A DNA stretch of 64,000 nucleotides from positions 4,154,001 through 4,218,000 of the forward strand of contig NC_043002.1 of NCBI RefSeq assembly GCF_006345805.1, written 5' to 3'. The translations under genes and the position numbers were made by a program. The notes under the pieces were generated by a model that was given only the letters and a program-made list of their open reading frames with translations, had not been told where the DNA came from and searched no databases. Source of the stretch: Octopus sinensis (taxonomy: Eukaryota). Positions 3,900 to 60,957 of this stretch are shown here, piece after piece (the stretch's first letter is position 1; each line of letters opens with the position of its first letter).

Positions 3900-5472
3900 T
3901 TTAATACTAAAAATTGTACTTTGTTGGTTCTGGGAGAATGACACTTGCAACATTGGCTATTTGAGTTAAAAGAATGCAAACATTCCCGATAGAGGCTTTT
4001 AATTCCAACTTTGTGTACAAAAAAGCTTGGAAAATCTATAAAGATCCGTGATTTCTATAAATCGCTGCCTCCTGCATGGTTGCAATGACCGCTGGTCGTC
4101 ATTTTCTCTTCCAGGAAGAATCTGCAATTAAAAACCTTTTAATTTGTCCCAAGATATTCGGATTTATTGCCCTTGCACTTTGTACCCAGTCCAAAAGCCT
4201 ACTAAATGTAAAAGAATGCGTGGAAAACGAATATGCACACAAAAATTGGTGTTACTTTAGAGTGGACCCGACCCTTTAGTACCGACGGAAACTCAAAGAA
4301 GCCCGTCGTATATATATGTCTGTCCCCCACCATAGCTTAACAGCCGATGTTGGTGTTTATGTCCCCGAGACCATTAGGGGAAATTTTGTGTACTCCCATC
4401 ATAACCTGCGTGTTACATTTTCCAGCACAATTCAACTGAGTTACTAAAGGGCCATTAAGTTTTCTTAATGGTTGACTTTGAAACGGGAATAACCGTGGTT
4501 CGACATCAATGTCAGTCATTCCATTGAAATTCGCTCCAACAATTAGAATTGATAGTTAACATCCATCAGGCTGGGTTTTTTTTCTTTTTTTTTTGTTAAC
4601 GGTAATCTTTCAAACTAAAGCGTTTGACCCCGTCATAAAAAAAGTGTAATGGGTGTAAAACAACTTGCTCTACTCTTCTCAAGTAGTACCAATATCGTGT
4701 TGGGCTTTCCCTTAGAATCGTTGACCCTGAAAGCGAAAAAACAAGACCAACAAGGTAGGGACGATCAACTCCGCTTTTTTCTCGAAAAAGTTGAAATTTC
4801 ACAATTTTTTTTTTTCCCGAATCATAATCTCTGTATTTTTCCACTTATTTCGCCTACAGAAATTTCTCAAAAAAAGTCAATAAAGAAATGGGGATGAGAT
4901 TTTAAATTCGTAACTTGCAAATTTCTTTTCTTTTTTTCAGAATCGGAATCTCTTTAGCCGAAAACGTGGTTTCAGTAAAAAAAAAAAAGGGTGAGATTGG
5001 GGTCACGTCTGGGCCATGTGCGCCGCCAAATACCCGCACACAATCCGTTTTCAGAGAAACACCATCAGACAAAAACTCATGAATTTGTATTGAATTAAAA
5101 ACTTGCTGTTTTTTAAAATAATTTTCTTCTTTTCCTATGGAAGATCGGTTTTATTTAAAATTATAGAAAGACATAAACCTTTACTGTAGTTATGCGATCG
5201 AAATTACCGACCGAAATTTAAATAATATAAACGATATAGATTCCTCTTGGAACACGACACCAATATTTTATAAGACTAGATCTACGTAAATGTAATGTAC
5301 ATGAAAGAAGAGGATAAGGGAGATTCGTTGAGGTTTTCCAAAGATTCTTTTTACCATTTTAAAATTCCTCAACAGACATTCGTCCCTTTAAAACTAAAGC
5401 AAAAAAATGATCAATCGAAGAATTAGTCTTTTTGGCTTTTCCTTTTTATATTACCATATACAATAAATGCGG

Positions 5473-27827: not shown

Positions 27828-27867
27828 AAATATCAACAACAAATAAACGTGGCAGTGCCAAAATTAC

Positions 27868-28039
27868 CTTCTTTAATGAGAGTGGCTGGGTCTTTGTCCT
27901 TAAGCTGTGAGATGACTTTCTTCATTTTACTGGCTTCGGCCTCAATACCAACGCTGCCTAAAATCTTCTCCAAATCAGCTTCAGTTGGTTGTTTCACACC
28001 CCCAAGGGTGGCAAGGAGATAAGCGGCCACGTAACGCAT
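27868..28039 (-). CDS. RPLP2: 60S acidic ribosomal protein P2, first coding exon (172 nt)
   Basis: MRYVAAYLLATLGG...KILGSVGIEA...; acceptor TTGCAG 1 nt before ATG, so a non-coding exon lies upstream; GTAATT donor; spliced CDS 339 nt = 112 aa + stop. Confidence 0.97.
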
Positions 28040-28384
28040 TCTGCAATGAGATAAAAGAAAATGCACACCTGTCAATAAGGCAAATTTATGTTACACTCAC
28101 TCATCTGACGACTGCATCTCATAATCTGAGACCCAGTTTTCAACACACTAAATACTAATTTGCTGTTACATTCACCTTAACAGAACTTCTCTAATAAAAA
28201 AATTATAAGGCAGCAAAAATATAATATAAATTGAAGTGAATCTCAGATTGAAAAATAAAAATGCATTTTAGGTTTCTTATTGTGTAACGTAAAAAATGAA
28301 ATTAAGAGGCTTTTGGGACAATTATTTACTAATTGAAGAGTTTATTTTTGTACACAGTTAAATCTCCACATTACTTGCCATAGA

Positions 28385-28695
28385 AGTACATCAGACGGTG
28401 GTAATGTAGCAATTAAGGTGGTAAGCTGGCAGAAACATTAGCACGCTGGGCGAAATGCTTAGCGGTATTTCGTCTGCCGTTACATTGTAAGTTCAAATTC
28501 TGCCGAGGTTGACTTTGTCTTTCATCCTTTTGGGGTCGATAAATTAAGTACCAGTTACACACTGGGGTCGATGTAATCGACTTAATACCTATGTCTGTCC
28601 TTGTTTGTCCACTCTGTGTTTAGCCCCTAGTGGGTAATAAAGAAATATAGAAAATTAATCAGGCTTTCAGAGCATCAAAAAGTCATCATCTGTTG
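28385..28695 (-). pseudogene. Box C/D snoRNA paralogue split by a SINE
   Basis: ATGATGA (28683-28689), D' CTGA, then SINE 28417-28646, then GCTACATTACCACCGT-CTGA, matching the D guide of the array copies. Confidence 0.65.
28417..28646 (+). mobile_element. tRNA-derived SINE (S3)
   Basis: Similar to 15505-15736. Confidence 0.85.
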
Positions 28696-29078
28696 AATGG
28701 CCGTAGTGGAGACTGCTGAAGTAAACAAATAGAAATTTGAGCACTTTTCTGTACTTAATGGTAACTACATTTTCTTAACTTACTTCTAAAAAGATTAACC
28801 TTACCTCTCAATCTCAACTGCTGATGTAAATTGTATGTTGTAGCATGCAAGTGAAAGCCAACATTGTGACCTTTCAATGACAATCACAAAACAGCCCAAA
28901 AATGCAAAGTTCTCTTACATAATTCCTGAGTGACAATAATGGATTTTTCATAGAAAAAGCTGATTGGCATATATTGTCTGGAGCCTAAATTGATACCAGA
29001 ATGAAGGAGTAGTTCAGAGCATGCAAGACTATTCACTCAATGTGGCACCACCAAGAAAGCCAAAGTCTGGAATATACA

Positions 29079-29208
29079 CATTGTCCGGTGTCTTAACGGG
29101 CACCTGACTGAATTAGCACAGTTGGTGTACGCAGGATCACCGAGTTAATGTAGCACTTTTAATCAGTAACTCACAATCTATGAAGAGTGAAAGTGGTCGA
29201 GGAAGTGC
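29079..29208 (-). ncRNA. Box H/ACA snoRNA candidate, copy 1
   Basis: 130 nt: hairpin GCACTT/AAGTGC, H box ACATTA, hairpin TCGGTG/CACCGG, ACA three nt from the 3' end. Confidence 0.85.
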
Positions 29209-29867
29209 AAATTTCAATTTGCATTACGAAGAATAACTTCCATTTTTTAAATATGTACATTTGTTTAGAACCATTTAATGAATATAGCATCTTCAAACAT
29301 GCTCACAATTTACAAGTACCGAGATTGCTGAGAAGTACCTTGTGAAGACATAGATCTATAGCTTTCCTCTGCTTTAAAGGAAAACATCCCAATTTACAAT
29401 CATGTTTGTCCTGAATTCAAAATGTAAGACAGATTTCAAACTCACAGGTAAAATACATGTCTTATATAGTTTAACAAAGAAATTCAAAATAACCTATTAA
29501 TCTTGGTAGAAACATGTCCTGCTTGCTCTGGTTTATTTAGCCATGTCTTTGAGGATAACACAAAAACGTTTACTTGTAACACCTGCAAAAACCCGACTCT
29601 TTGCAATACAGCATCTATACAAAAAAACTTTAAGAACAATGACTACAATTCCTTAACTATACTTTAAAACACTAAAGCTGTTGAAGGAACTCCCAACTTT
29701 CACACTTCTAAATGCTGATTTGCCAGGAATCTAAGAGCATCACTGTACAGTATTACTACCAACCAAAACCTCCCCTCTAGAGCATAAATTGGAAAAGAGA
29801 GAGAGGAAGCGAATACAATCAGTCGCCTTTCTAAATGATTTGTAAAGATGTTTCACAGGTGCCATAG

Positions 29868-29947
29868 CAGTATATCAGACGGTGGTAAAGTAGCATAAAA
29901 TCTTAATCATACAATCAGAAAATATTCGAAAGTCATCATCTATACTG
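29868..29947 (-). ncRNA. Box C/D snoRNA candidate, copy 1
   Basis: 80 nt: terminal stem CAGTATA/TATACTG, C ATGATGA, D' CTGA, C' ATGATTA, D CTGA. Confidence 0.88.
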
Positions 29948-31027
29948 TCTAGAAATGGCAGCTATGGAAACCCTAACCCATATGCCACACCTTCAGTTAT
30001 AAATAATTTCCATGTCTTAGCTTCCATTAGAACCCCAGATTTCAGCAACTGCTCCACAGTCCGTGTTAATTTAAAATCATAAAGACATATAATGTGCTGA
30101 ACATTATCCTAAATACTACTTCCCTCGCCTGAAAATAAATATAAAACTAGTCCAGACACAAACTATAATTCCAACGGCAACAATGACAAGACCCCTATTA
30201 CAGGGGGCAAATATCACTTGAGCAAAACTGGGCTTTCAGTTTTGCATGTTGGGCCTAATGTAACTTGCACACTGCTGCCCAGTGGGACTGAACTCAAACC
30301 AGCATGTCTCAAGTGAACATTTTTTTCATAAGGCCACACTTACTTGACAAACATTAACGTTGTATAAAAAAAAAGAAAGAAAAAAAGGTTTGAAGCCTAT
30401 ACGGTCACCTAAAAGAGAAAACTGGAAGTCCACTGGCTTCGACATGGTCTCTGGATGAGACTCTCTTTCAAGATCCCAGATGCCCCATTAGTCTACAATT
30501 CTACATAAACAAGATGCGCAATAAAATCACTATAGTAGTGATGTGCTTACTCCAGTAACCGAGACAATTGGTTAGAGAGAAGAGGGCAACTTGTTTAGAA
30601 ATAGCAGCCAAATTCCCTACAAACTCACATTAAAAATTCAGAAACGACCACTGAAACCTCTTTGATTACATTTGTTACAAAGAATGGCAAGTCTGTACTG
30701 CTAGTTTATTTCGAGAATTCCATGTGAAATGCAGTACAGACGAGTTCTCGGACTTTCGATACACATTTACATAAGAGGTTACAAACGGGGCAGCGCCTTA
30801 AGTCGTAATTCAGTGAAATCATACTGTGGACAGTGTTGTGGATGGCCCTGTATCCTTCAATGGCAAGCCCTGCATTTGATCTTGATCTCACTACCTAGGC
30901 TTTTAAAAGGTAATGACTTTAAATGGCCATAACTGTTAGACTTTCGAATTAGCTAAATTCATATCATTTCATACTGACATCAAAACAGGATCAGAACTCC
31001 TGCGTAGAAGCAGACTTAAATTATACA

Positions 31028-31157
31028 CATTGTCCGGTGTCTTAACGGGCACCTGACTGAATTAGGACAGTTGGTGTACGCAGGATCACAGAGTTAATGT
31101 AGCACTTTTAATTAGTAACTCACAATCTATGAAGAGTGAAAGTGGTCGAGGAAGTGC
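31028..31157 (-). ncRNA. Box H/ACA snoRNA candidate, copy 2
   Basis: Same boxes; one mismatch in the 3' lower stem and a G>A change in the 5' pocket. Confidence 0.75.
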
Positions 31158-31809
31158 AAATTTCAATTTGCATTACGAAGAATAACTTCCATTTTTTAAA
31201 TATGTACATTTGTTTAGAACCATTTAATGAAAATAGCATCTTCAAACATGCTCACAATTTACAAGTACCGAGATTGCTGAGAAGTACCTTGTGAAGACAC
31301 AGATCTATAGCTTTCCTCTGCTTTAAAGGAAAACATCCCAATTTACAATCATGTTTGTCCTGAATTCAAAATGTAAGACAGATTTCACAAACTCACAGGT
31401 AAAATACATGTCTTATATAGTTTAACAAAGAAATTCAAAATAACCTATTAATATTGGTAGAAACATGTCCTTCTTGCTCTGGTTTTATCTAGCCATGTCT
31501 TTGAGGATAACACAAGAAGGTTTACTCGTAACACCTGCAAAAACCCGACTCTTTGCAATACAGCATCTATACAAAAAAACTTTAAGAACAATGACTACAA
31601 TTCCTTAACTATACTTTGAAACACTAAAGCTGTTCAATGAACTCCCAACCTTCACACTTCTAAATGCTGATTTGCCAGGAATTTAAGAGCATCACTGTAC
31701 AGTATTACTACCAACCACAAACTTCCCTCTAGAGCATAAAGAGAGAGAAAGCGAATATAATCAGTCGCCTTTCTAAATGATTTGTAAAGATGTTTCACAG
31801 GTGCCATAG

Positions 31810-31889
31810 CAGTATATCAGACGGTGGTAAAGTAGCATAAAATCTTAATCATACAATCAGAAAATATTCGAAAGTCATCATCTATACTG
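31810..31889 (-). ncRNA. Box C/D snoRNA candidate, copy 2
   Basis: Appears identical to copy 1. Confidence 0.88.
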
Positions 31890-33380
31890 TCTAGAAATGG
31901 CAGCTATGGAAACCCTAACCCATATGCCACACCTTCAGTTATAAATAATTTCCATGCCTTAGCTTCCATTAAAACCCCAAATTCCAGCAACAGCGCTACA
32001 CTTGTTTATAAATCATAAAGACATATAACGTGCTGAACATTATCCTAAATACTATTTCCCACGCCTGAAAATAAATATAAAACTAGTCCAGACACAAACT
32101 ATAATTCCAAAGGCAGCAATGACAAGACCCCTATTACAGGGGGCAAATATCACTTGAACAAAACTGGGCTTTCAGTTTTGCATGTTGGGCTTAATGTAAC
32201 TTGCACACTGCTGTCCAGTGGGACTGAACTCAAACCAGCATGTCTCAAGTGAACATCTTTTTCATAAGACCACACTTACTTGACTAACATTAACCGGTTT
32301 AAAAAAAAAAAAAAAGATGGTTTGAAGCCTATACAGTCACCTAAACCACTGGCTTCGACATGGTCTGGGTTAGGGTATTCTCTAGTTGAGATTCTCTTTG
32401 AAGATCCCAGATGCCCCATTAGTCTACAATTCTACATAAACAAGATGCGTAATAAAATCACAATAGTAGTGATGTGCTTACTCCAGTAACAGAGACAATT
32501 GGTTAGAGAGAAGAGGGCAACTTGTTTAGAAATAGCAGCCAAATTCCCTACAAATCTCAGATTAAAAATGCAGAAACGACCACTGGAACTTCTTTAATTA
32601 CATTTCTGTTAGATTAGGGCTCATCTGAGGAAAAACTTCAAAAAGAAAGCAACATCCCATTAATTCCGAGAAATTTCAATTGCCCTAACACCGAAAAATG
32701 AGTCATACAAGGTTTATTCAAATATATTTTACAATAGTAACACAAAGACCGGGTTAGGACAAAATCTCATCAATATAATTAGTTCGGGTGCCCTTTCGCA
32801 GATGTCTATAAAATAAAAAGAATGGCAAGTCTGTACTGCTAGTTTATTTCAATAATTCCATATTAAAAACAACACAGACGAGTTCTCATGGACTTTCGAA
32901 ACACGAGATATTTTACTTCCCAAAACACATTTACATAAGAGGTAACAAACGGGGCAGCGCCTAAAGTCGTAATTCAGTGAAATCACACTGCAGACAGCGT
33001 TGTAGATGGCCCTGTATCCTTCAATGGCAAGCCCTGCATTTGATCACGATCTCACTACCTTAGGCTTCAAATATATTAAAAACAGTACAGACGAGTTCTC
33101 ATGGACTTTCGAAACACACTCACACAAGAGGTACCAAATGGGGCAGCGCCTAAACTCGTAATTCAGTGAAATCATACTGTGAACAGCGTTGTAGATGACC
33201 CTGTATCCTTCAATGGCAAACTCTGCATTTGATCTCGATCTCACTACCTAGGCTTTTAAAAGGTAATGATTTTAAATAGTCATAACTGTTAGACTTTCGA
33301 ATTAGCCAAATTCATATCATTCCATACGTACATCAAAACAGGATCAGAACTCCTGCGTAGAAGCAGACATAAATTATACA

Positions 33381-33510
33381 CATTGTCCGGTGTCTTAACG
33401 GGCACCTGACTGAATTAGGACAGTTGGTGTACGCAGGATCACAGAGTTAATGTAGCACTTTTAATTAGTAACTCACAATCTATGAAGAGTGAAAGTGGTC
33501 GAGGAAGTGC
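33381..33510 (-). ncRNA. Box H/ACA snoRNA candidate, copy 3
   Basis: Same variants as copy 2. Confidence 0.75.
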
Positions 33511-33579
33511 AAATTTTAACTTGCATTAAGAAGAATAACTTCATTTTTTAAATATGTACATTTGTTTAGAACCATTTAA

Positions 33580-33798
33580 CCCTTTAGTATTTAAACCGGC
33601 CATATCCGGCCAAAATAGTTAATCTGTTTTATGTTCAAACTGACCAGATCCAGGCTCTCACACCTACCCTACAATGTTATTCTACATTAAGTAATTACAC
33701 CATCAAGATCTTGAAGATATGAGATAATGCATGATTAATTCAAATCAATGGGAATCAATAAGCATTATGTTTGATAGAATAATCAGAACGCTAAAGGG
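33580..33798. mobile_element. piggyBac-type MITE inserted in one array unit
   Basis: TTAA|CCCTTTAG...CTAAAGGG|TTAA; the other units show the empty site CCATTTAATGAA. Confidence 0.9.
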
Positions 33799-34383
33799 TT
33801 AATGAAAATAGCATCTTCAAACATGCTCACAATTACAAGTACCGAGATTGCTGAGAAGTACCTTGTGAAGACATAGATCTATAGCTTTCTTCTGCTTTAA
33901 AGGAAAACAACCCAATTTACAATCATGTTTGTCCTGAATTCAAAATGTAAGACAGATTTCACAAATTCACAGGTAAAATACATGTCTTATATAGTTTAAC
34001 AAAGAAATTCAAAATAACCTATTAATATTGGTAGAAACATGTCCTTCTTGCTCTGGTTTTATCTAGCCATGTCTTTGAGGATAACACAAGAAGGTTTACT
34101 CGTAACACCTGCAAAAACCCGACTCTTTGCAATACAGCATCTATACAAAAAAACTTTAAGAACAATGACTACGATTCCTTAACTATACTTTGAAACACTA
34201 AAGCTGTTGAAGGAACTCCCAACTTTCACACTTCTAAATGCTGATTTGCCAGGAATCTAAGAGCATCACTGTACAGTATTACTACCAACCACAAACTTCC
34301 CTCTAGAGCATAAAGAGAGAGAAAGCGAATATAATCAGTCGCCTTTCTAAATGATTTGTAAAGATGTTTCACAGGTGCCATAG

Positions 34384-34463
34384 CAGTATATCAGACGGTG
34401 GTAAAGTAGCATAAAATCTTAATCATACAATCAGAAAATATTCGAAAGTCATCATCTATACTG
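34384..34463 (-). ncRNA. Box C/D snoRNA candidate, copy 3
   Basis: Appears identical to copy 1. Confidence 0.88.
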
Positions 34464-35433
34464 TCTAGAAATGGCAGCTATGGAAACCCTAACCCATATG
34501 CCACACCTTCAGTTATAAATAATTTTCATGTCTTAGCTTCCATTAGAACCCCAGATCTCAGCAACTGCTCCACAGTCCGTGTTAATTTAAAATCATAAAG
34601 ACATATAACATGCCGAACATTATCCTAAATACTATTTCCCTCGCCTGAAAATAAATATAAAACTAGCCCAGACACAAACTATAATTCCAACGGCAACAAT
34701 GACAAGACCCCTATTACAGAGGGCAAATATCACTTGAACAAAACTGGGCTTTTAACACTGCTGTCCAGTGGGACTGAACTCAAACCGGCATGTCTCAAGT
34801 GAACATTTTTTTCATAAGGCCACACTTACTTGACAAACATTAACTGGTGTAAAAGAAAAAAAAGATGGTTTGAAGCCTATACAGTCACCTAAACCACTGG
34901 CTTCGACATGGTCTGGGTTAGGGTATTCTCTAGTTGAGATTCTCTTTGAAGATCCCAGATGCCCCATTAGTCTACAATTCTACATAAACAAGATGCGCAA
35001 TAAAATCACAATAGTAGTGATGTGCTTATTCCAGTAACCGAGACAATTGGTTAGAGAGAAGAGGGCAACTTGTTTAGAAATAGCAGCCAAATCCCCTACA
35101 AATCTCACATTATTTCGAGAATTCCATATTAAAAACAGCAAAGACGAGTTCTCATGGACTTTCGAAACACACTCACATAAGAGGTACCAAATGGGGCAGC
35201 GCCTAAACTCGTAATTCAGTGAAATCATACTGTGGACAGCGTTGTGGATGGCCCTGTATCCTTCAATGGCAAACTCCGCATTTGATCTCGATCTCACTAC
35301 CTAGGCCTTTAAAAGGTAATGATTTTAAATGGTCATAACTGTTAGACTTTCGAATTAGCCAAATTCATATCATTCCATACGTACATCAAAACAGGATCAG
35401 AACTCCTGCGTAGAAGCAGACTTGAATTATCCA

Positions 35434-35563
35434 CATTGTCCTGTGTCTTAACGGGCACCACACTGAATTAGGACAGTTGGTGTACGCAGGATCACAGAGT
35501 TAATATAGCACTTTTAATCAGTAACTCACAATCTATGAAGAGTGAAAGTGGTCGAGGAAGTGC
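35434..35563 (-). ncRNA. Box H/ACA snoRNA candidate, copy 4
   Basis: H box ATATTA; lower stem TCTGTG/CACAGG is a compensatory double change relative to copy 1. Confidence 0.85.
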
Positions 35564-36173
35564 AAATTTTAACTTGCATTAAGAAGAATAACTTCATTTT
35601 TTAAATATGTACATTTGTTTAGAACCATTTAATGAAAATAGCATCTTCAAACATGCTCACAATTTACAAGTACCGAGATTGCTGAGAAGTACCTTGTGAA
35701 GACATAGATCTATAGCTTTCTTCTGCTTTAAAGGAAAACAACCCAATTTACAATCATGTTTGTCCTGAATTCAAAATGTAAGACAGATTTCACAAATTCA
35801 CAGGTAAAATACATGTCTTATATAGTTTAACAAAGAAATTCAAAATAACCTATTAATCTTGGTAGAAACATGTCCTGCTTGCTCTGGTTTATTTAGCCAT
35901 GTCTTTGAGGATAACACAAAAAGGTTTACTCGTCGACTACAATTCCATAACTATACTTTGAAACACTAAAGCTGTTGAAGGAACTCCCAACCTTCACACT
36001 TCTAAATGCTGATTTGCCAGGAATCTAAGAGCATCACTGTACAGTATTACTACCAACCACAGGTCCAACCCAAACCTCTCCTCTAGAGCATAAATTGGAA
36101 AAGAGAGAGAGGAAGCGAATACAATCAGTCGCCTTTCTAAATGATTTGTAAAGATGTTTCACAGGTGCCATAG

Positions 36174-36253
36174 CAGTACATCAGACGGTGGTAAAGTAGC
36201 ATAAAATCTTAATCATACAATCAGAAAATATTCGAAAGTCATCATCTATACTG
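36174..36253 (-). ncRNA. Box C/D snoRNA candidate, copy 4
   Basis: All boxes and the guide intact; one A>G change in the terminal stem. Confidence 0.88.
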
Positions 36254-37051
36254 TCTAGAAATGGCAGCTATGGAAACCCTAACCCATATGCCACACCTAC
36301 AGTTATAAATAATTTTCATGTCTTAGCTTCCATTAGAACCCCAGATCTCAGCAACTGCTCCACAGTCCGTGTTAATTTAAAATCATAAAGACATATAACA
36401 TGCCGAACATTATCCTAAATACTATTTCCCTCGCCTGAAAATAAATATAAAACTAGCCCAGACACAAACTATAATTCCAACGGCAACAATGACAAACCCC
36501 CTATTACAGGGGGCAAATATCACTTGAGCAAAACTGGGCGTTCAGTTTTGCATGTTGGGCCCAATGTAACTTGCACACTGCTGCCCAGTGGGACTGAACT
36601 CAAACCAGCATGTCTCAAGTGAACATTTTTTTCATAAGGCCACACTTACTTGACAAACATTAACGTTGTATAAAAAAAAAAAGAAAGAAAAAAAGGTTTG
36701 AAGCCTATACGGTCACCTAAAAGAGAAAACTGGAAGTCCACTGGCTTCGACATGGTCTCTGGATGAGATTCTCTTTCAAGATCCCAGATGCCCCATTAGT
36801 CTACAATTCTACATAAACAAGATGCGCAATAAAATCACTATAGTACAGATGTGCTTACTCCAGTAACCGAGACAATTGGTTAGAGAGAAGAGGGCAACTT
36901 GTTTAGAAATAGCAGCCAAATTCCCTACAAATCTCACATAAAAAAATTCAGAAACGACGACTTCAATGGCAAGCTCCGCATTTGATCTCGATCTCACCAC
37001 CTGGGCATTTAAAAGGTAATGATTTTAAATAGTCATAACTTAAATTATACA

Positions 37052-37180
37052 CATTGTCCGGTGTCTTAACGGGCACCTGACTGAATTAGGACAGTTGGTG
37101 TACGCAGGATCACCGAGTTAATATTGCACTTTAAAACAGTAACTCACAATCTATGAAGAGTGAAAGCAGTCGAGGAGTGC
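37052..37180 (-). ncRNA. Box H/ACA snoRNA candidate, copy 5 (divergent 5' hairpin)
   Basis: H box ATATTA, ACA box and 3' hairpin intact; several 5'-hairpin changes. Confidence 0.75.
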
Positions 37181-51040: not shown

Positions 51041-51113
51041 TGCCGAAACCCGGGATTGAACCAGGGACCTTTAGATCTTCAGTCTAACGCTCTCCCAACT
51101 GAGCTATTTCGGC
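51041..51113 (-). tRNA. tRNA-Phe(GAA)
   Basis: 73-nt canonical cloverleaf, intact A/B boxes, oligo-T terminator 17 nt downstream. Confidence 0.97.
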
Positions 51114-51757
51114 TGGTGAAAATTTGGCTATAAACTATCGCAGTCATTTCTACTCTGTATCAAGTTCAGAGTGAAATCAATTAGTGAAATTAATTAGTAA
51201 ACTGTGTAGAGATGAAAGGAAAGAATGACCCCACCGTCGGCGTTAGGATTCCCTGGCATTCTAACTTATTCTACGTTGAGAACTATTTCTTCTGTCGCAT
51301 ACCATTACTGTATTTTCCTCAGATTCTACTAATTCCATTTGATTGTTGTTTACACTGGCGCGTAAGGCCGTGTGATATGATTCGTATTTGGGATTATTCT
51401 ACACATGTTGTTACTATCTATTACGAAATTATTAACAGTATTATTTACCATTTTATTTATTCTATAGAAAAGAAAATGATCCTAGTTTTAGCTGAGACAG
51501 TATAGAATAATGTTTCTTTGTATTTTGTTCGTCCAACCACCCGCTTTTTGATGGCATATCAACAGTCATTAGGACCAAAAATTCAAGCTAAACTTCCAGC
51601 CTTTACATACCACTAAGTAAGATTTAAGGAGTACTAGCCCAGTACTCCTGAAATCCAATGGTTAGCACTCCAAGTTCAGAAACTCTACTATTATAGAAGT
51701 AATCGAAAAGCTTTGCAGCAAATAATTTAACCCTCGCAGCACTGTTTCCGCTTTCCG

Positions 51758-51912
51758 CAGAGGTCCCCAACCATTTCACTACCAAGGACTCCTTTTATTT
51801 AAATGAGTTTTCCCACGGACCCCTTTTAATACGCTTTGTATATATATAAAATTTTGAATTTAGTTCACGGATCCCAGTACTGCCTTTGCGGACCGCAGGT
51901 TGTGAACCACTG
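51758..51912. mobile_element. hAT-like MITE
   Basis: CAGAGGTCCCCAACC / GGTTGTGAACCACTG termini; no TSD match. Confidence 0.45.
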
Positions 51913-53029
51913 AGCGAATAGCCGATGTAATTACCCTGTTCTAACAGCCTATGTAATTACCAACTACGACCATCCAATCTTTTTGTCTATCGGGGACAAC
52001 ATTGTCTAATGTATCCTCTCTTTTTAATGTAGAAAGATGTGTGTTTCGAATGAGATTAAGCTGCTATTTCTAGCAGCCAAATTTAAGAGTTCGAGCAACA
52101 ACGCAAAACTTTATACTCGGTTATGTAGAATGATACCCATTACTCCATGGGGTACTTATTTACCCGTCGGGAAGCGAAAAGGCGGGATTCTAGAGAGTAC
52201 CTTGTCGAACGTATCCTTTAGCGCTTATTACCCTGTATTTCAAACAGAAGCAAAATAAATACAATTGTATAGTAAAAAAAAAAACTAATAGTAGATGCGT
52301 GGAGTTACATTAATTAACGTTCCAAAAATTCAACAGACACAATATATGTGTTTATTCACTCGTATTTGCGAAATAACTTCTGGTGGATCACAATGGAATT
52401 TATTACACCAAATATATCAGTTATGAACCGAACGAATTACATTTTAGTAATTAGTCGTGGAATATATATATATATATAGATTAAACGTTACATTGCTCCG
52501 CATGGTGTTACTTCCTATTATAACGGATTATGGTAACAAGTGAAATTTAAATATATTAAAGATTGCCGATTGCCTATTAAAAGATGTATATTTGTAGAGA
52601 TAATACAGTATATTGAAAAATGGTAAAAATTCTAAGAAGTATACATGTTTTTGTAGCAGCCTATAAACACACATATACAACAATATACGATCATTAAATA
52701 CATTTTATCATTTGTATTTCAGTTTTTCATTTTATTTTCGTATAATTTTTGCAATTATATAAGCATCTGACTCTACTAAAATTTAACATTAATTATCACA
52801 GTGGACAAAGAACCAGTTTAAATTTACATTGCAGTACTTAATTAGGTTCTGGGCGGTGCAGATCGATGAAATAAGGGCTATGTGTTGCCAAAATAAGTGG
52901 GTCTTCCCCAAATACGGCTTTGTGTTAGAAATCCCATATCGAAAAGAGAATAATTTACGCAGACATAAATAATTAAATTGTTATATACAACACGACTGAC
53001 ATCGATAATGTACAAGCATATCTTTACCA

Positions 53030-53102
53030 GCCGAAATAGCTCAGTTGGGAGAGCGTTAGACTGAAGATCTAAAGGTCCCTGGTTCAATCCCGGGTTTCGG
53101 CA
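53030..53102 (+). tRNA. tRNA-Phe(GAA)
   Basis: Identical 73-mer; oligo-T terminator. Confidence 0.97.
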
Positions 53103-53577
53103 TCCGGTGGCTGGTCTGCTTTTTTTTTTTTTTTTTTTTTTTCGTTCTTCATATTCTGTTTTCATTCATGTTTGAATCTAGGCCTGGCCAACTGTTCTTT
53201 TCAAAGATTTTATTTCTTATATATATACTTAACTCTTAGACATGACGTCGAGGCTATAACGTAATCCACAGAAAAGATAATCCTGTGAATACAAACAAAA
53301 TATAAGTTGCGGATCTTTTCTGTTTGATAGACGGAAACAGAAAAGATCCTCAGTTGCAATACGTTACAAAGTGAACGAAGAATCATAAGGTTTTTTACTC
53401 GCTCACACGCCGCCATCTCCCTCTCTTTCACTCGCGCGCTACGCACTCACACACACACACACACACGCACGCACGCACGCACACACACACACACAAAGGC
53501 GCGCAAGAATTCGTAGAGAGCAGTACTTACGTTCTAATTTCATCGGTAACTCTAGGTTGTGGGGCCAATGAAATCTG

Positions 53578-53804
53578 GGTACTACTTGAGAACAGTGGTC
53601 CCGGTGCGCGCACTAGCGTAGTCGCGCATCTGCGCTAGCTAGTCGTAAGTAGTCGATCCTACAACGATTACCTAGCAAAGTAAATAAAACACAAAACACA
53701 AAGTAAATAACACCCAAAAACACAAAGTAAGGATCGACTAGTCATGACTAGCTAGCGCGACTGCGCGAGTCCGCGCACCGGGACCACTGTTCGCTAGTAG
53801 TACC
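53578..53804. mobile_element. Merlin-type MITE, copy E
   Basis: GGTACTACT TIRs; flanked by a ~35-bp direct duplication. Confidence 0.85.
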
Positions 53805-53976
53805 CGGTAGGTAACTCTAGGTACTGGGGCCAATGAAATCTGTAGCACCCGAGGTGGATACGATCAATGTGTCGCCTTTTATTAAAAGCCATGACTACAA
53901 GAAAACGTCTTTGGTAAGAATGTACTTTGATATGCAATACGACTGACATGGAAAGTTTAGAGAGAAACCATTACCA

Positions 53977-54049
53977 GCCGAAATAGCTCAGTTGGGAGAG
54001 CGTTAGACTGAAGATCTAAAGGTCCCTGGTTCAATCCCGGGTTTCGGCA
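53977..54049 (+). tRNA. tRNA-Phe(GAA)
   Basis: Identical 73-mer; oligo-T terminator. Confidence 0.97.
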
Positions 54050-55075
54050 TCCGGTGGCTGGTCTGCTTTTTTTTTTTTTTTCGTTCTTCATATTCTGTTT
54101 TCATTCATGTTTGGATCTAGTCCTGGCCAACTGTTCTTTTCAAAGATTTTATTTGTATTCATTTCATCCCGGATCCCAACTACCTTTCATCCTTCTGGTT
54201 ATGTATTATATTACAGGTATGGTGATAAGTGCCCTCGCGCAAAAGTCTCGGACCTTGAGTCACTCTGTTGTTTCTGCTAAATATTAATAAAAATGTAATA
54301 TTATATTACATCAATTTTCAGCGACTTACTACCAATTTTTGTTCAAGCCTCGTGTTTCTTTTTTACGACTTCCATTAGTCTGCAACTATTCCTGCTTATA
54401 TCTTTCACCCAGTTAGCACCACGAGCTTAGGATCTCTCGAAGATTCTATCTATTTCGTATTCACCGTTTAAACTTTTTTTTCTAAAAGAAAACCACTCCA
54501 TTTCTTTAACCGTTTTAGTGTTATTTTTTCTCTTTTCATTTTTCTAATTATGATAACGAAAATGTTATTACAGTAATACTTAACTCTTAGACATGACGTC
54601 GAGGCTATAACGTAATCCACAGAAAAGATAATCCTGTGAATACAAACAAAATATAAGCTGCAATACGTTACAAAGTGCACCAATAATCATAAGATTTTTT
54701 ACTTGTAATTATTGGATAACTTAGTATCGTGACGAACTGCCTCTGTATCAATCTTGAGAATCTGGGTTTCACAAAACCAAAAAGAACTCGCTTAACAAAG
54801 ATATTACAGTTACAAGCTATTAAAGACACCGTGGGAATATGTGACACACTGAATAAGTGTAGCATATATTATATATGAAATATGTCATAAATCACAGTGA
54901 CAGATATATTGTTGTTGAGCGAAGGTGATAGGTGGAGAACTCGGAGTAACGATTTCTGAAGTTTTGGTCTCTCGTACAATGTCATTACTGAGTACTCTTT
55001 TCTACTCGATCACACGCCTCTTTCTCCCTCTCTTCAGTTTAACGCTCTCCCAACGCACGCGCACACACACACACA

Positions 55076-55146
<71 letters not shown>

Positions 55147-55374
55147 CACACACACCCACACACACACGCACGCACGCTAGTAGCACCCGGTAGGTAACTC
55201 TAGGTACTGGGGCCAATGAAATCTGTAGTACCCGAGGTGGATACGATCGATGAAACCCCTCTCAATGTGTCGCCTTTTATTAAAAGCCATATCTACAAGA
55301 CAACGCCTTTGGTAAGAATGTACTTTGATATGCAATACGAGTGACATGAAAAGTTTAAAGAGAAACCATTACCA

Positions 55375-55447
55375 GCCGAAATAGCTCAGTTGGGAGAGCG
55401 TTAGACTGAAGATCTAAAGGTCCCTGGTTCAATCCCGGGTTTCGGCA
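55375..55447 (+). tRNA. tRNA-Phe(GAA)
   Basis: Identical 73-mer; oligo-T terminator. Confidence 0.97.
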
Positions 55448-55699
55448 TCCGGTGGCTGGTCTGCTTTTTTTTTTTTCGTTTTTTATTAAATTTTAATTTT
55501 AATTTGACCAACTAATCCTTTCAATAATTTTATTTCCATTCATTTCATCCCGGATTCCACCTGCCTTCCGTTCCATTGGATTTGTTATATTCCTGATGCA
55601 AACAGGAAAAATATAACTCACACTTTGAGTGTATGTCTATTTCTATTAAGCTTCGAAAGTGCCAATGTACGAAACTCCGGGCCCTTGAGTCACTCTATC

Positions 55700-56220
55700 G
55701 CGGAATTTGTCACTGTTATTTATGAGAAAAAAGATACCCTGTGGCCATAAACTGAGGGCTCTCTCGTAAACAGAGCTGGATAACAAAACCGTTCCCTCTT
55801 TAGTGTCCACCCATAATTATGACCCTCGTATCGATCTATTGCATTTCAATCTGTTTTAGGATTAGGGTTAGGGTTAAGGTTAGAGTTAGGGTTAGGGTTA
55901 GGATTAGGATTAGGGTTCATGGCCACAGGGTATCTTTTTTCTCATAAATAACAGAGACAGATTCATATGACAGCGCAAATAATTGTAGTGGACAAAGATC
56001 CGGAGATATTGTATTCACCTCAATAGACGTCATTGATTGGTTGAAATTGCCGAAATGCAAGAAATTACACAACAAATAGCTTACAAACTACAGAATTTTC
56101 TCAAGAAAGCCAAGAGAAAAAGATGTTTTATGTAACACATTCTACCAGTATACGAAGTTTAAAAGTGTTTAGTTACAAAGAAATCATTTTAAAAATCTGC
56201 CGGTCAAAGCGAAAAGATCC
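55700..56220. mobile_element. Foldback element with central TTAGGG tract (left arm largely deleted)
   Basis: Telomere-like tract ~55855-55917; right arm matches 59310-59617. Confidence 0.8.
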
Positions 56221-56794
56221 TAATCTTATAATCCTATAATCTACAAATGAAATGACATTCATATCTGCACCCACCTGCTCCTGCGTGCAAACACATGTGT
56301 ATTCATTATGTATACATGTATACATGTGCGAGTATGCTTATGTACATGTGTTTATTAATGCATGCATACGTGCGTACATTGCATACATACAATGTATGAG
56401 ATTATCCTATTGGCGCTGTGTGAATTCCAATGAGTCTAATCTCTGGGCTAGAAATGGATTATTTTAACATTTAATTAGAAAAATTAACACCAAGTAATCA
56501 TATATATTGTTGTTGAGCGAAGGTGATAGGTGGAGAACTCGGAGTAACGATTTCTGAAGTTTTGGTCTCTCGTACAATGTCATTACTGAGTACTCTTTTC
56601 TACTCGCTCACACGCCTCCTTCACCTTCTCTTTCACTCGCGCGCTACGCACGCACACACACACACACACACACACCACACACACACACACACACACACGT
56701 ACACACACACACACACACACACACACGTACACCACACACACACACACACACACACACACAAAGGCGCGCAAGAATTCATAGAGAGCAGTACTTA

Positions 56795-58085
56795 CGAGGG
56801 GCGTTCAATAAGTAATGCCTCTGACCCACTTGCAGTTGTTTGATCTAGCTGAAATTTTGCATGTGCAATTATTTATATTTCTATAGATTACGTGGCAAAT
56901 TACAGCTCCGAACTAATTGTGGTTTCTGATTTACAGGTGTTTGAAATGAGTCAAGTGTGAAATGGAGCCTTTTAAGTGTCGAGCAATGATCCGGTTTTTG
57001 TATTTGAAAGGACGCACACCACGGGAGTCTTTTGATAAAATGAAAGTAACTTATGGTGATGATGCCCCTTCATATGACCTTGTAAAACGCTGGCATCGTG
57101 AATTCAAACATGGTCGGAACTCTGTGGAAACAGCTCCCAGATCTGGTCACCCCCTTCTGCCATTGATGAGGCATCTGTCCGTCAAGTTGAAGCTGCCATT
57201 TTGAAAGATCGACGCATAACTATTCGCCAAATAGCCCATGAGGTCAAGATCAGTACCGGGTCTGTGGAAACTATCATTCATGACCATTTGCATATGCAAA
57301 AGGTGTCTGCCAGATGGAGTCCCCAGGTTGTTCACACTTTTCCAGAAGCAAGAACGCGTCGGTGCTCGAGGATGAATTTAGGGATGTGCCAAGAAGATGA
57401 GTCAAAATTTTTCAAAAGACTGATTACACAGGATGAGACCTGGGTCCATCACTATGATCCAGAGACCAAAGCCCAGTCAATGCAGTGGAAGCACCATGAC
57501 TCACCTCCTCCAAAGAAGGCAAGGGTGCAGCCCTCCGCTGACAAGGTCATGCTCACAGTCTTCTGGGACTAGGACGGAGTAGTGATGACAGATTTCCTAG
57601 AAAAGGGTACCACAATTACAGGAGCCTATCATGCTTCACTTTTGAGGAAATTAAGAGAAGCTATCAAAACCAAGAGGCGGGGCAAGATCAGCAAAGGCAT
57701 CCTCCTCTTGCAGGACAACGCTCCGGTCCACAACTCGCGTGTCGCCAGATCAGAAGCACAGGCGTGCGGCTATGAACTCTTCCCTCATCCCCCTACTCTC
57801 CTGACCTTGCACCCTCTGATTTTCACCTCTTCCCAGCCATGAAGTTGTTTTTGAAAAGAAAGTGTTTCCCAGATGATGCAGCCTTGATTTCTGAAGTCAC
57901 ATCGTGGTTGGAAGACCAAGCTGGGGTCTTCTACGAAAACGGTCTCCAGAGCCGCATCAAACAATGGGAGAAATGCGTAACTCTGGGTGGTTCCTATGTA
58001 GAAAAAGACTAATAACTGTGCCAAGTTTCGTTGCTCTACTGCTATGGGAAGTGGATCAGGGGCATTACTTATTGAACGCCCCTCG
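56795..58085 (+). mobile_element. Full-length but defective mariner (DD34D) transposon, 1291 bp
   Basis: TIR CGAGGGGCGTTCAATAAGTAATGCC at both ends, TA TSD. Transposase 56962-58012 (ITQDETW, QDNAPVH, YSPDLAPSD) broken by frameshifts and a TAG at 57570. Confidence 0.95.
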
Positions 58086-58135
58086 TACGTTCTAATTTCA
58101 TCGGTAACTCTAGGTAGTGGGGACAATGAAATCTG

Positions 58136-58338
58136 GGTACTACTTGAGAACAGTGGTCCCGGTGCGCGCACTCGCGTAGTCGCGCATCCGCGCTAGCTAG
58201 TCGTAAGTAGTCGATCCTACAACGATTACCTAGCAAAGTAAATAAAACACAAAACACAAAGTAAGGATCGACTAGTCATGACTAGCTAGCGCGACTGCGC
58301 GAGTCCGTGCACCGGGACCACTGTTCGCTAGTTGTACC
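58136..58338. mobile_element. Merlin-type MITE, copy F
   Basis: Same position in the tRNA unit as copy E, with a small internal deletion. Confidence 0.85.
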
Positions 58339-58527
58339 CGGTAGGTAACTCTAGGTACTGGGGGGCCAATGAAATCTGTAGTACCCGAGGTGGATACGAT
58401 CGATGAAATCCCCCTTAATGTGTCGCCTTTTATTAAAAGCCATATCTACAAGACAACGCCTTTGGTAAGAATGTACTTTGATATGCAATACGAGTGACAT
58501 GAAAAGTTTAAAGAGAAACCATTACCA

Positions 58528-58600
58528 GCCGAAATAGCTCAGTTGGGAGAGCGTTAGACTGAAGATCTAAAGGTCCCTGGTTCAATCCCGGGTTTCGGCA
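58528..58600 (+). tRNA. tRNA-Phe(GAA)
   Basis: Identical 73-mer; oligo-T terminator. Confidence 0.97.
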
Positions 58601-58852
58601 TCCGGTGGCTGGTCTGCTTTTTTTTTTTTCGTTTTTTATTAAATTTTAATTTTAATTTGACCAACTAGTCCTTTCAATAATTTTATTTCCATTCATTTCA
58701 TCCCGGATTCCACCTGCCTTCCGTTCCATTGGATTTGTTATATTCCTGATGCAAACAGGAAAAATATAACTCACACTTTGAGTGTATGTCTATTTCTATT
58801 AAGCTTCGAAAGTGCCAATGTACGAAACTCCGGGCCCTTGAGTCACTCTATC

Positions 58853-59617
58853 GCGGATCTTTTCGCTTTGACCGGCAGATTTTTAAAATAATTTCTTTGT
58901 AACTAAATACTTTTAAACTTCGTATACTGGTAGAATGTGTTTATAAAACATCTTTTTCTCTTGGGTTTCTTGAGAAAATTCTGTAGTTTGTAAGCTATTT
59001 GTTGTTTAATTTCTTGCATTTCGGCAATTTCAACCAATCAATGACGTCTATTGAGGTGAATACAATTTCTGCCATAATGTGTCAACAACAATTATTTGCG
59101 GTGTCATATGAATCTATCACTGTAATTTATGAGAAAAAGATACCCTGTGGCCATAAACTGAGGCCTCTCTCGTAAACAGAGCTGGATAACAAAACCGTTC
59201 CCTTTTTACTATCTACCCATAATTATGACCCTAGAATCGATCTATTGCATTTTAATCTGGGTTAGGGTTAGGGTTAGAGTTAGGGTTAGGGTTAGGATTA
59301 GGATTAGGGTTTATGGCCACAAGGTATCTTTTTTCTCATAAATTACAGTGACAGATTCATATGACACCGCAAATAATTGTAGTGGACAAAGATCCGGAGA
59401 TATTGTATTCACCTCAATAAACGTCATTGATTGGTTGAAATTGCCGAAATGCAAGAAATTACACAACAAATAGCTTACAAACTACAGAATTTTCTCAAGA
59501 AAACCAAGAGAAAAAGATGTTTTATGTAACACATTCTACCAGTATACGAAATTTAAAAGTGTTTAGTTACGTGGAAATTATTTTAAAAATCTGCCGGTCA
59601 AAGCGAAAAGATCCCCG
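58853..59617. mobile_element. Foldback element: ~305-bp TIRs around a unique core and a TTAGGG tract
   Basis: Arms 58853-59158 and 59310-59617 are reverse complements; (TTAGGG)-like tract 59259-59310. Confidence 0.85.
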
Positions 59618-59806
59618 TTATGATACATATATTGCTGAGCGAAGGTGACGGGTGGAAAACTCGGGTTGACGATTTCTGAAGTTTTGGTTTCTTCTATAAG
59701 CCATCGCTGAGTTCTCGTTTCTATTCGCTCTTCCCTGTCTGCAACAGGAATGCGGTTTGGTATACAATACAATTGACATGGAAAGGTTAGACGCAATCAG
59801 CCGCCA

Positions 59807-59879
59807 GCCGAAATAGCTCAGTTGGGAGAGCGTTAGACTGAAGATCTAAAGGTCCCTGGTTCAATCCCGGGTTTCGGCA
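59807..59879 (+). tRNA. tRNA-Phe(GAA)
   Basis: Identical 73-mer; oligo-T terminator. Confidence 0.97.
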
Positions 59880-60957
59880 TCCGGTGGCTGGTCTGCTTTT
59901 TTTTTTTTTTTTATCTTTCGCTCTTCACATTCAAGTTTTAGTCTAGGTCTCACCAACAGTTCCTTTCACTGGTTTTATTTCCATTCCTTTCATCCCGGAT
60001 TCCACCCACCTTTCATTCCACTCGATTTATAATATATTACAAGTTTGGTGATGCAAACAAGAAAAATAGAATCCAAAATACGAGTGTATGTATATTTGTA
60101 TTAGGCTCCGCAAGTGCCAACGCATGAGACTCTCGGCCGTTGGGCCACTCTTTTGCTCCTGCTAAATATTAATAAAAATGTATCATATTGCATCAATTTT
60201 CAGCGACTCCCTACCAATTTTTGTCTAAACTTCACGTTTCTTTTTCAAGACTTTCATTACAGTCTCAACGGATTCCTGACAATACCTATTTCTTTACTAC
60301 CCACAAGGGGCCAAACACAGAGAGGACAAACAACGACAGACACACTGATTAAGTCGATTATATCGACCCCAGTGCGTAACTGGTACTTATTTAATCGACC
60401 CCGAAAGGATGAAAGGCAAAGTCAACCTGACAATACCTTTCACCTAGTTGCCACTACAAGCCTTTTATATCTCCTGAGGATTTTGTTCATTTCTCATTCA
60501 CCATTTACATTTTTTTTTCTTGAAACACAAACCACTTTTTTAATCGCCTTTTGCTATAAACTTGGGCTGACTAAAGCCTTGTGAATGGATTTGGTAGATA
60601 GGAACCGAAAGAAGGACTGCTGCAGTAAGCGTGTGAGTCTGAGAGGGGAATATGTTGAATAAAATCATAATTAACTGATCCTCCTGTGTTTTCTTTTACC
60701 TCAAGCCAAGAACTTTTCAGCACTACCTCGTACATGTAAGACTATGCTATTGATACTGTGTAAATTCCAATAAAGCGCCTCATGACTAGAAAATGGTTAT
60801 TTTCCCCCACTGGTGATTTATGCGAAAAATAAAAACAGGAAAACATGCGTCCATATAGTTTTGATCGAAAGTCAGGAACGGAAAACTCAGAGCAACAATT
60901 TCTTTTCCGCTTCTTCTCACTCAAATGCTCTCTCTTTCTTTCTCTCCCTCTGTGTGT

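What the first reader, a model, noticed from the sequence alone, without database searches (positions are those of the whole stretch)
29079..37180. H/ACA candidate: compensatory stem change and a predicted 28S pseudouridylation site
Seen: the 3' lower stem is CGGTG/CACCG in copies 1 and 5, CTGTG/CACAG in copy 4 (compensatory) and mismatched in copies 2-3. The H box varies only at an N position (ACATTA/ATATTA). The 3' pocket strands CCTGCGT and CCGTT are invariant and sit 15 nt from ACA. Recalled metazoan 28S sequence AAACGG-U-A-ACGCAGG pairs 5+7 bp, predicting a pseudouridine there; I do not recall this as a mapped human site. The 5' pocket ACTGATT could pair with 18S AAUCAGU (~nt 103-109 human) in copies 1 and 4 only; its geometry is weaker.
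Basis: partly seen in the sequence, partly recalled or inferred. Interest (0 to 1): 0.75.

Follow-up and report, generated by a model that had tools for sequence, protein, structure and literature searches.

The report
Amplified octopus H/ACA snoRNA candidate
Five tandem copies of a roughly 130-base element in an octopus-like genome have the shape of an H/ACA guide RNA. Their guide sequence fits a conserved uridine of the animal's own 28S rRNA next to the ribosome's catalytic centre, which makes a plausible but still unproven new snoRNA, not a new kind of system.

Summary
The sequence facts hold. Five minus-strand copies (130 nt, 93-100% alike) have hairpin, ACAUUA/AUAUUA hinge box, hairpin, then ACA. 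The invariant 3' pocket (CCUGCGU / CCGUU, 15 nt from ACA) pairs 7+5 Watson-Crick bp around an unpaired U-A in the genome's own 28S rRNA. Only 4 of 2000 shuffled pockets do as well.

That U corresponds to human U4218 in the helix 81 loop, two bases 5' of m6A4220. A compiled human modification table lists no pseudouridine there.

The best 5' pocket match is instead a 28S U 42 nt upstream, on the other side of the P-loop, but its geometry is off (17 nt to the H box).

Context helps. Each ~2 kb unit also carries a canonical C/D snoRNA. The array lies between a TOP-like first exon and the ATG exon of RPLP2.

The evidence has limits:
- The single compensatory pair is not significant.
- The units are about 97% identical throughout.
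- H/ACA-like shapes arise by chance about 3 times per window.
- There is no Rfam match.
- The tools for sequencing reads and for cross-species loci were unavailable.

Verdict: a probable new H/ACA snoRNA (~0.6), a new member of a known kind.

The parts
29079..29208 (-). H/ACA-like copy 1 (nearest the RPLP2 ATG exon). Its 3' lower stem is intact (G-C at the variable pair). It has one private change, in the apical loop of the 3' hairpin.
   Evidence: R1 169.9 bits
31028..31157 (-). H/ACA-like copy 2. It has a U.C mismatch in the 3' lower stem, and a G-to-A change in the 5' pocket shortens the pairing to the 28S.
33381..33510 (-). H/ACA-like copy 3, identical to copy 2.
35434..35563 (-). H/ACA-like copy 4. 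The lower stem is restored as U-A. A CA-to-GU change adds a pair to the upper stem. The H box is AUAUUA.
37052..37180 (-). H/ACA-like copy 5, at the upstream edge of the array. Its 3' hairpin equals that of copy 1. Its 5' hairpin carries 7 changes, none in the upper stem. Its 5' pocket has the longest complementarity (9+8 bp) to 28S U5656.
29868..29947 (-). C/D box snoRNA-like element, first of four intact copies. The others are at 31810-31889, 34384-34463 and 36174-36253. It has a 7-bp terminal stem, a C box AUGAUGA, and D' and D boxes CUGA. Both guides fit adjacent stretches of the own 28S (about nt 1885-1909).
   Evidence: (Rfam SNORD34 30.5-33.2 bits, below the gathering score of 38)
28380..28700 (-). 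An older, diverged C/D copy, split by an insertion of about 230 nt of a SINE-like repeat. The same repeat family occurs at 39001-39235.
   Evidence: read directly; repeat family D12
38139..38292 (-). Candidate promoter and non-coding first exon of RPLP2. It has pyrimidine (TOP-like) tracts, CACGTG motifs, and a donor A|GUAAGU at 38138-38133.
   Evidence: read directly; an inference, with no RNA evidence
27860..28040 (-). RPLP2 ATG exon. The acceptor UUGCAG sits immediately before A-AUG, and the ATG is at 28039-28037. The low-coordinate end of the exon is approximate.
   Evidence: (98% identity to Octopus bimaculoides 60S acidic ribosomal protein P2)

Best explanation
The element is a lineage-specific box H/ACA snoRNA gene, amplified together with a C/D snoRNA as a ~2 kb cassette. 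There are five H/ACA and four intact C/D copies. They lie in the non-coding region between the TOP-type first exon and the ATG exon of the ribosomal protein gene RPLP2.

Proposed steps, all inferred rather than shown:
1. The RNA is released from the host pre-mRNA's intron or introns.
2. It is bound by the dyskerin complex.
3. Its 3' pocket pairs with the helix 81 loop of 28S rRNA. The strand CCUGCGU pairs with ACGCAGG, and CCGUU pairs with AACGG.
4. This presents U5698 of the own 28S (human U4218, two nucleotides 5' of the conserved m6A4220 position) for conversion to pseudouridine.

The 5' pocket may guide a second site, U5656, 42 nt upstream on the other side of the P-loop. This is most convincing in copy 5.

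What is shown: the sequence anatomy, the complementarity to the own rRNA, and the genomic context.
For: - Architecture. The element is hairpin, U, ANANNA box, hairpin, ACA, then 3 nt, 130 nt in total. The pockets are 10+10 nt. The lower stem of 5-6 bp abuts the ACA.
- 3' pocket. It pairs 12 contiguous Watson-Crick bp around an unpaired U-A, 15 nt from the ACA. This is the best hit in all own rRNAs. Only 4 of 2000 shuffled pockets reach 12 Watson-Crick bp.
- Target. It lies in a universally conserved loop beside the P-loop and the peptidyl transferase centre, the kind of place where rRNA pseudouridines cluster.
- 5' pocket. Its best hit lies 42 nt from the first target. Shuffled pockets land that near in 2-4% of trials. 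For copy 5, 0 of 500 shuffles equal its score.
- Variation. All five variable columns of the 3' hairpin avoid the guide strands, the upper-stem pairs and the ACA. One lower-stem pair changes G-C to U-A. The 7 changes in the 5' half of copy 5 avoid the upper stem.
- Context. Every unit also holds a canonical C/D snoRNA. The array sits in an RP gene's 5' non-coding region, a classic snoRNA host setting.
- Not a dispersed repeat. Only this array and one degenerate copy exist in the 2.7 Gb genome.
- No coding potential. The ORFs in the array match no protein domain.
Against:
- No Rfam H/ACA family matches, even at E<=10.
- The units are about 95-100% identical outside the elements as well, so conservation between copies says nothing.
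- A simple H/ACA grammar finds about 3 chance candidates per 128 kb of random sequence and 6 others in this window. Shape plus a 12-bp match would therefore recur by chance many times genome-wide.
- With G-U pairs allowed, the complementarity p-value is only about 0.03.
- The compensatory pair is one event.
- Copies 2-3 carry a mismatch in a 5-6 bp lower stem.
- The 5' pocket geometry is non-canonical. It lies 17 nt from the H box, with 3 spare nucleotides on one strand.
- Several snoRNAs in what may be one intron is unusual for animals.
Confidence: 0.6

Rival explanations
1. The element is simply part of a young, non-functional tandem duplication that hitch-hiked with the C/D snoRNA or the RPLP2 promoter region. 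On this view the H/ACA-like boxes, stems and rRNA complementarity are coincidence.
For: - The units are about 97% identical throughout, so there is no extra conservation of the element.
- H/ACA-like grammar hits occur by chance several times per window.
- The compensatory change is not significant.
- There is no Rfam match.
- Two of the five copies have a broken lower stem.
- The divergence of copy 5 rises gradually towards the edge of the array (3' half 0 changes, 5' half 7 changes, flank about 77% identity). A limit of copy homogenisation would give the same pattern as selection.
Against: - A 12-bp all-Watson-Crick bipartite match with correct spacing to a conserved core loop has p of about 0.002.
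- The second pocket's best hit falls 42 nt away.
- The boxes, the 15-nt spacing, the pocket sizes and the placement next to a canonical C/D snoRNA inside an RP gene all coincide.
Confidence: 0.22
2. It is a genuine H/ACA RNA, but the 28S helix 81 uridine is not its substrate. It would then be an orphan, a guide for another RNA, or a factor in pre-rRNA folding or processing that pairs without modifying.
For: - Human U4218 is unmodified in compiled data, and no paper in the library names a pseudouridine there.
- An A.C mismatch closes the pocket, instead of a base pair directly at the upper stem.
- Many real H/ACA RNAs have pockets with no confirmed target (general knowledge).
Against: This rRNA match is the best among all own rRNAs and is statistically unusual. 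Its geometry is canonical for modification.
Confidence: 0.13
3. It is another class of structured RNA or DNA element, such as a scaRNA, a miRNA precursor or a regulatory hairpin of the host gene.
For: The fold z-scores are only modest, -1.6 to -2.9. The minimum-energy fold pairs the H box with the 3' tail.
Against: - Neither apical loop (UCAU, UCCUAAUU) contains a CAB box (UGAG).
- No miRNA or other Rfam family matches here.
- This reading explains neither the box positions nor the rRNA complementarity.
Confidence: 0.05

Closest known systems
Box H/ACA snoRNAs of animals (pseudouridylation guides bound by dyskerin/Cbf5, Nop10, Nhp2 and Gar1)
   Same: It shares the two-hairpin layout with an ANANNA hinge box and a terminal ACA. 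It shares a bipartite pocket that leaves U-N unpaired 14-16 nt from the box, a length of about 130 nt, and a location in non-coding parts of a ribosomal protein gene.
   Different: It has no sequence or structure match to any of the Rfam families. The predicted target is not a known pseudouridine in human, nor in yeast by my recollection. Its expression and its protein binding are untested.
Human SNORA52, an H/ACA snoRNA hosted in an intron of RPLP2 (host relation and target from my own knowledge, not tested here)
   Same: The host gene is the same, RPLP2, and the RNA class is the same.
   Different: The Rfam scan of the window, which covers all Rfam families, found no H/ACA match. SNORA52 is reported to guide a different 28S site, Psi3823 in the old numbering. 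The octopus element lies upstream of the ATG exon and is amplified fivefold.
Intronic clusters of tandemly duplicated snoRNA isoforms, as described for Drosophila melanogaster and plants (my own knowledge; Huang et al. 2005, RNA)
   Same: Several near-identical snoRNA isoforms generated by tandem duplication lie in one host-gene region, with H/ACA and C/D genes close together.
   Different: Here the repeat is a two-gene cassette of about 2 kb in a mollusc. Whether each copy has its own intron is unknown.
ZCCHC4-dependent m6A4220 in the helix 81 loop of human 28S rRNA (PMC6954407, PMC11724314)
   Same: It concerns the same loop. The predicted pseudouridine is two nucleotides 5' of the equivalent adenosine. 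That adenosine would be the first base paired with the guide's 5' strand.
   Different: It is a different modification, made by a stand-alone enzyme rather than by a guide RNA. Whether the octopus has this m6A was not established. One search found one exon-level match to the Pfam domain PF10237, which I recall occurs in other methyltransferases besides ZCCHC4, so the match may not be specific.

Membership tests
Box H/ACA snoRNA | Hairpin, hinge, hairpin, tail fold with an H box (ANANNA) in the hinge | tested here: met
   ACAUUA or AUAUUA sits 1 nt after hairpin 1 and 2-3 nt before hairpin 2 in all five copies.
Box H/ACA snoRNA | ACA box 3 nt from the mature 3' end | tested here: inconclusive
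   ACA directly follows the lower stem in all copies.
Box H/ACA snoRNA | Internal pocket with bipartite complementarity to a target, leaving U-N unpaired 14-16 nt from the H or ACA box | tested here: met
   The 3' pocket pairs 7+5 Watson-Crick bp with own 28S U5698, 15 nt from the ACA; 4 of 2000 shuffles do as well. The 5' pocket's best site, U5656, is 17 nt from the H box with a 3-nt spacer, so the criterion is not met for that pocket.
Box H/ACA snoRNA | Helices supported by covariation, or conservation in related species | tested here: inconclusive
   There is one double change (G-C to U-A) among 28 pairs, and 260 of 500 shuffles reach it.
Box H/ACA snoRNA | A stable ~130-nt nucleolar RNA associated with dyskerin, and pseudouridine at the predicted site | not testable with these tools
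Any curated Rfam H/ACA family (including SNORA52) | Covariance-model score at or near the family threshold | tested here: not met
   No H/ACA family matched at E<=10 over 28500-37700, nor at E<=0.5 over the whole window.
scaRNA (Cajal-body H/ACA RNA) | CAB box (UGAG) in the apical loops | tested here: not met
   The apical loops are UCAU and UCCUAAUU.
SNORD34 (for the neighbouring C/D element) | Rfam gathering score and the family's guide sequence | tested here: not met
   The score is 30.5-33.2 bits against a gathering score of 38. The aligned guide region differs. Its own guides fit 28S around nt 1885-1909 instead. It is a canonical C/D snoRNA, but not shown to be SNORD34.

The most novel reading that the evidence does not exclude
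Octopods carry a lineage-specific dual-guide H/ACA snoRNA, amplified fivefold in the 5' non-coding region of RPLP2. It would install two pseudouridines bracketing the P-loop of 28S rRNA. One (the equivalent of human U4218) lies two nucleotides from the conserved m6A4220 position. The other lies at a position that, by my recollection, is C in human. If so, cephalopods decorate the peptidyl transferase centre differently from vertebrates and yeast, and modification of the helix 81 loop can be guide-RNA-dependent.
Probability: 0.25. Interest if true: 0.5.

Novelty: new member of a known kind. Interest (0 to 1): 0.35.

Why it matters
If real, this adds an unannotated snoRNA gene family and one or two rRNA pseudouridylation sites not listed for human (and, by my recollection, yeast), right beside the P-loop and the m6A-bearing helix 81 loop. 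It would give a concrete, cheaply testable prediction for modification mapping of cephalopod ribosomes.

It also shows a snoRNA cassette (H/ACA plus C/D) being amplified in tandem inside a ribosomal protein gene. This fits the earlier scan note of a SNORD31 array just upstream of this window, and suggests that tandem snoRNA arrays are a feature of this genome.

It does not change how H/ACA guides are understood to work.

Tried and rejected
- **Orthologous loci.** I built no joined, spliced RPLP2 model.
- **Rfam.** No H/ACA family matched.
- **Paralogues.** DNA and covariance-model searches of the own genome found only the five copies plus one degenerate copy on contig C15. That copy has no ACA, a changed guide and an insertion in hairpin 1, so it is useless for covariation.
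Rejected, because the heptamer is absent from the own 18S.
- **Conservation between copies as evidence of selection.** Rejected, because the flanks are equally similar.
- **Architecture alone as evidence.** Rejected after the grammar and Markov control. The strict two-pocket grammar does not even recover the candidate, because of its 5' pocket spacing.
- **Literature.** Searches for a pseudouridine at human U4218/U4188, yeast U2641 or E. coli U2272 found nothing relevant.
- **ZCCHC4.** There was one exon-level PF10237 match in the genome, which is not specific enough to use.
- **Earlier scan notes.** Word searches for snoRNA failed.
- **Tandem Repeats Finder.** It found nothing, because the unit is longer than its maximum period of 500.
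Full report
**What is there.** The window is part of contig C6 of a 2.7 Gb, 13,516-contig genome. An earlier scan note calls the genome octopus-like. The ribosomal protein exon next to the finding is 98% identical to Octopus bimaculoides RPLP2 and 95% identical to that of Argonauta hians.

Between 29065 and 37180 lies a tandem repeat with units of 1.6-2.4 kb. Tandem Repeats Finder misses it because the period exceeds 500. All candidate RNAs are on the minus strand.

A 130-nt element occurs five times: 29079-29208, 31028-31157, 33381-33510, 35434-35563 and 37052-37180. The copies are 93-100% identical. Each of the four full units also holds an 80-nt C/D-box element.

Almost every sequence statement is correct.
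- The lower stem of the 3' hairpin has G-C at the variable pair in copies 1 and 5, U-A in copy 4 and U.C in copies 2-3.
- The hinge box is ACAUUA or AUAUUA.
- The pocket strands CCUGCGU and CCGUU never vary.
- From the first guide nucleotide of the 3' strand to the ACA is 15 nt.

The layout is the canonical one:
- hairpin 1 of 56 nt, with a 6-bp lower stem, 11+11 nt pocket strands and a 5+3 bp upper stem;
- then U and the H box;
- hairpin 2 of about 60 nt, with a 5-6 bp lower stem, 10+10 nt pocket strands and a 4+4 bp upper stem;
- then ACA plus 3 nt.

With the pockets left open, this structure has -21 to -27 kcal/mol. Free folding gives z-scores of only -1.6 to -2.9.

**Test against the species' own rRNA.** I extracted one rDNA unit from contig C18: 28S = L013:663-7316:-, 5.8S = L013:7779-7937:-, 18S = L014:1679-4286:-.

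The 28S reads ...GUCAAACGG-U-A-ACGCAGGUG.... A scan of all three rRNAs for bipartite pairing around an unpaired U-N puts this site (U5698) first, with 12 contiguous Watson-Crick pairs. Of 2000 shuffled pocket pairs, 4 reach 12 Watson-Crick pairs anywhere. With G-U pairs allowed, 12 of 400 reach the same score. The long, GC-rich cephalopod rRNAs offer many wobble matches.

One detail departs from the ideal. An A and a C face each other between the guide duplexes and the first upper-stem pair.

**Where the site is.** The human helix 81 oligonucleotide used to assay ZCCHC4 is CACCUGUCAAACGGUA(m6A)CGCAGGUG, nt 4204-4228 (PMC6954407). The predicted uridine is therefore human U4218, two nucleotides 5' of m6A4220. 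A4220 would be the first base paired to the guide.

Helix 81 lies in domain V close to the active centre. The P-loop sequence CUGGGGCGG sits 20 nt upstream in the same stretch.

The compiled table in the supplement of PMC11724314 lists Gm4196, m6A4220, Um4227 and Gm4228 as the consistently reported modifications between 4196 and 4293. It has no entry at 4218. Text searches for a pseudouridine there in human, yeast or E. coli numbering found nothing. From memory, yeast has no pseudouridine there either.

**The 5' pocket.** The proposed 18S partner AAUCAGU does not exist in this animal's 18S. The usually conserved region after GGCUCA is diverged.

The best partner of the 5' pocket is instead 28S U5656, in CAGUG-U-C-GGUCGGGG. 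It lies only 42 nt 5' of U5698, on the other side of the P-loop. Shuffled pockets reach the observed score in 23 of 500 trials for copies 1 and 4, 53 of 500 for copies 2-3, and 0 of 500 for copy 5. The best hit of a shuffle falls within 60 nt of U5698 in 2-4% of trials.

All four pocket differences in copy 5 keep or extend pairing to this site. The degenerate C15 copy suggests that at least one of them is ancestral.

The geometry is poor, however. The guide starts 17 nt before the H box rather than 14-16, and three nucleotides of the 5' strand are left over. I treat this as a possible second target, not a prediction of equal standing.

**How much the rest proves.**
- The compensatory change is real but is a single event. 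The shuffle control reaches it in 260 of 500 trials.
- The units are 95-100% identical over most of their length, so the elements are no better conserved than their flanks.
- Copy 5, at the edge of the array, has a 3' half identical to copy 1, seven changes in its 5' half (none in the upper stem), and a 5' flank that is only about 77% alike over about 65 nt. Selection fits this, and so does a limit of copy homogenisation.
- A home-made H/ACA grammar finds about 3 chance candidates per 128 kb of Markov sequence and 6 others in this window. It detects copies 1, 4 and 5 only when the 5' pocket spacing is relaxed. Shape alone is therefore worth little, and shape plus a 12-bp match would recur by chance across 2.7 Gb.
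- No Rfam H/ACA family matches, even at E<=10.
- The element is not a dispersed repeat. DNA and covariance-model searches of the whole genome find only the array and one decayed copy.

**Context.** This is what lifts the prior.
- The companion element has a 7-bp terminal stem, C, D' and D boxes, and two guides that fit adjacent stretches of the own 28S. It is a canonical C/D snoRNA, although it falls below the SNORD34 threshold and lacks that family's guide.
- Reading 5' to 3' on the minus strand, the array is preceded at about 38292-38139 by pyrimidine (TOP-like) tracts, CACGTG motifs and a donor A|GUAAGU.
- It is followed at 28040 by an acceptor UUGCAG immediately before the AUG of RPLP2.
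- The array therefore occupies the 5' non-coding part of a ribosomal protein gene. It is either one ~10 kb intron or several small introns. Conserved donor-like and acceptor-like motifs flank both snoRNAs in every unit, but this cannot be weighed without RNA data.
- An older C/D copy between the array and the ATG exon is split by a SINE-like insertion.
- The ORFs in the array match no protein domain.

**Verdict.** The most likely reading (about 0.6) is a genuine, previously undescribed H/ACA snoRNA whose 3' pocket guides pseudouridylation of the helix 81 loop uridine of 28S rRNA.

The main rival (about 0.2) is a non-functional piece of a young duplication with coincidental motifs. A real H/ACA RNA with another or no substrate takes most of the remainder.

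This is a new member of a known kind. It is of interest mainly as a specific, testable prediction of a lineage-specific modification beside the P-loop and the m6A4220 position.

Noticed in passing
window 29868-29947, 31810-31889, 34384-34463, 36174-36253 (minus strand): There are four intact copies of a canonical C/D box snoRNA (Rfam SNORD34 30.5-33.2 bits, below the threshold of 38). Its D' and D guides fit adjacent stretches of the own 28S (about nt 1899-1909 and 1886-1894). It does not keep the SNORD34 guide.
   Followed up: partly
window 28380-28700 (minus strand): A fifth, older C/D copy lies between the array and the RPLP2 ATG exon. It is split by an insertion of about 230 nt of a SINE-like repeat also seen at 39001-39235. 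Its D guide is kept and its D' guide differs.
   Followed up: partly
window 38139-38292 and 28040 (minus strand): A TOP-like promoter and first exon with a GUAAGU donor lie about 10 kb upstream of the RPLP2 ATG exon, whose acceptor sits 1 nt before the AUG. The whole snoRNA array lies between them.
   Followed up: partly
window 31000-31020, 33353-33373, 35406-35426 (minus strand, about 25-30 nt 3' of copies 2-4): The downstream flank contains ACGCAGGA, the same heptamer as the rRNA target plus one base, so it is complementary to the guide's 5' strand. It overlaps a possible splice acceptor (CUACGCAG|G). It is absent beside copies 1 and 5. It may be coincidence or pairing within the precursor.
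   Followed up: no
window 51041-62835: There is a cluster of nine tRNA genes on both strands. Eight are identical and carry a GAA anticodon (Phe). A tRNA-derived fragment lies at 37398-37455 between the RPLP2 first exon and copy 5.
   Followed up: no
L001 (G000:C6303:415486-418798) and L010 (G000:C1618:6101-7767): The assembly holds a compact, AT-richer LSU and a 1667-nt SSU rRNA that differ clearly from the expanded octopus rRNAs. For example, helix 81 reads CUAAACAAUAACGCAGAUG. They probably come from a parasite, symbiont or contaminant, and they lack the guide's target sequence.
   Followed up: no
L014:1679-4286:- and L011 (own 18S copies): The octopus 18S is about 2.6 kb long. Its 5' region is diverged where most eukaryotes have GGCUCAUUAAAUCAGUUAUGG. 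Many 18S copies are scattered over different contigs.
   Followed up: partly
L009/L020 (G000:C15:46129570-46129721): A degenerate solitary copy of the H/ACA-like element, about 85% identical over the 3' hairpin. It has an insertion in hairpin 1, changed guide bases and no ACA. It is probably a pseudogene, and it shows that the family predates the array.
   Followed up: partly
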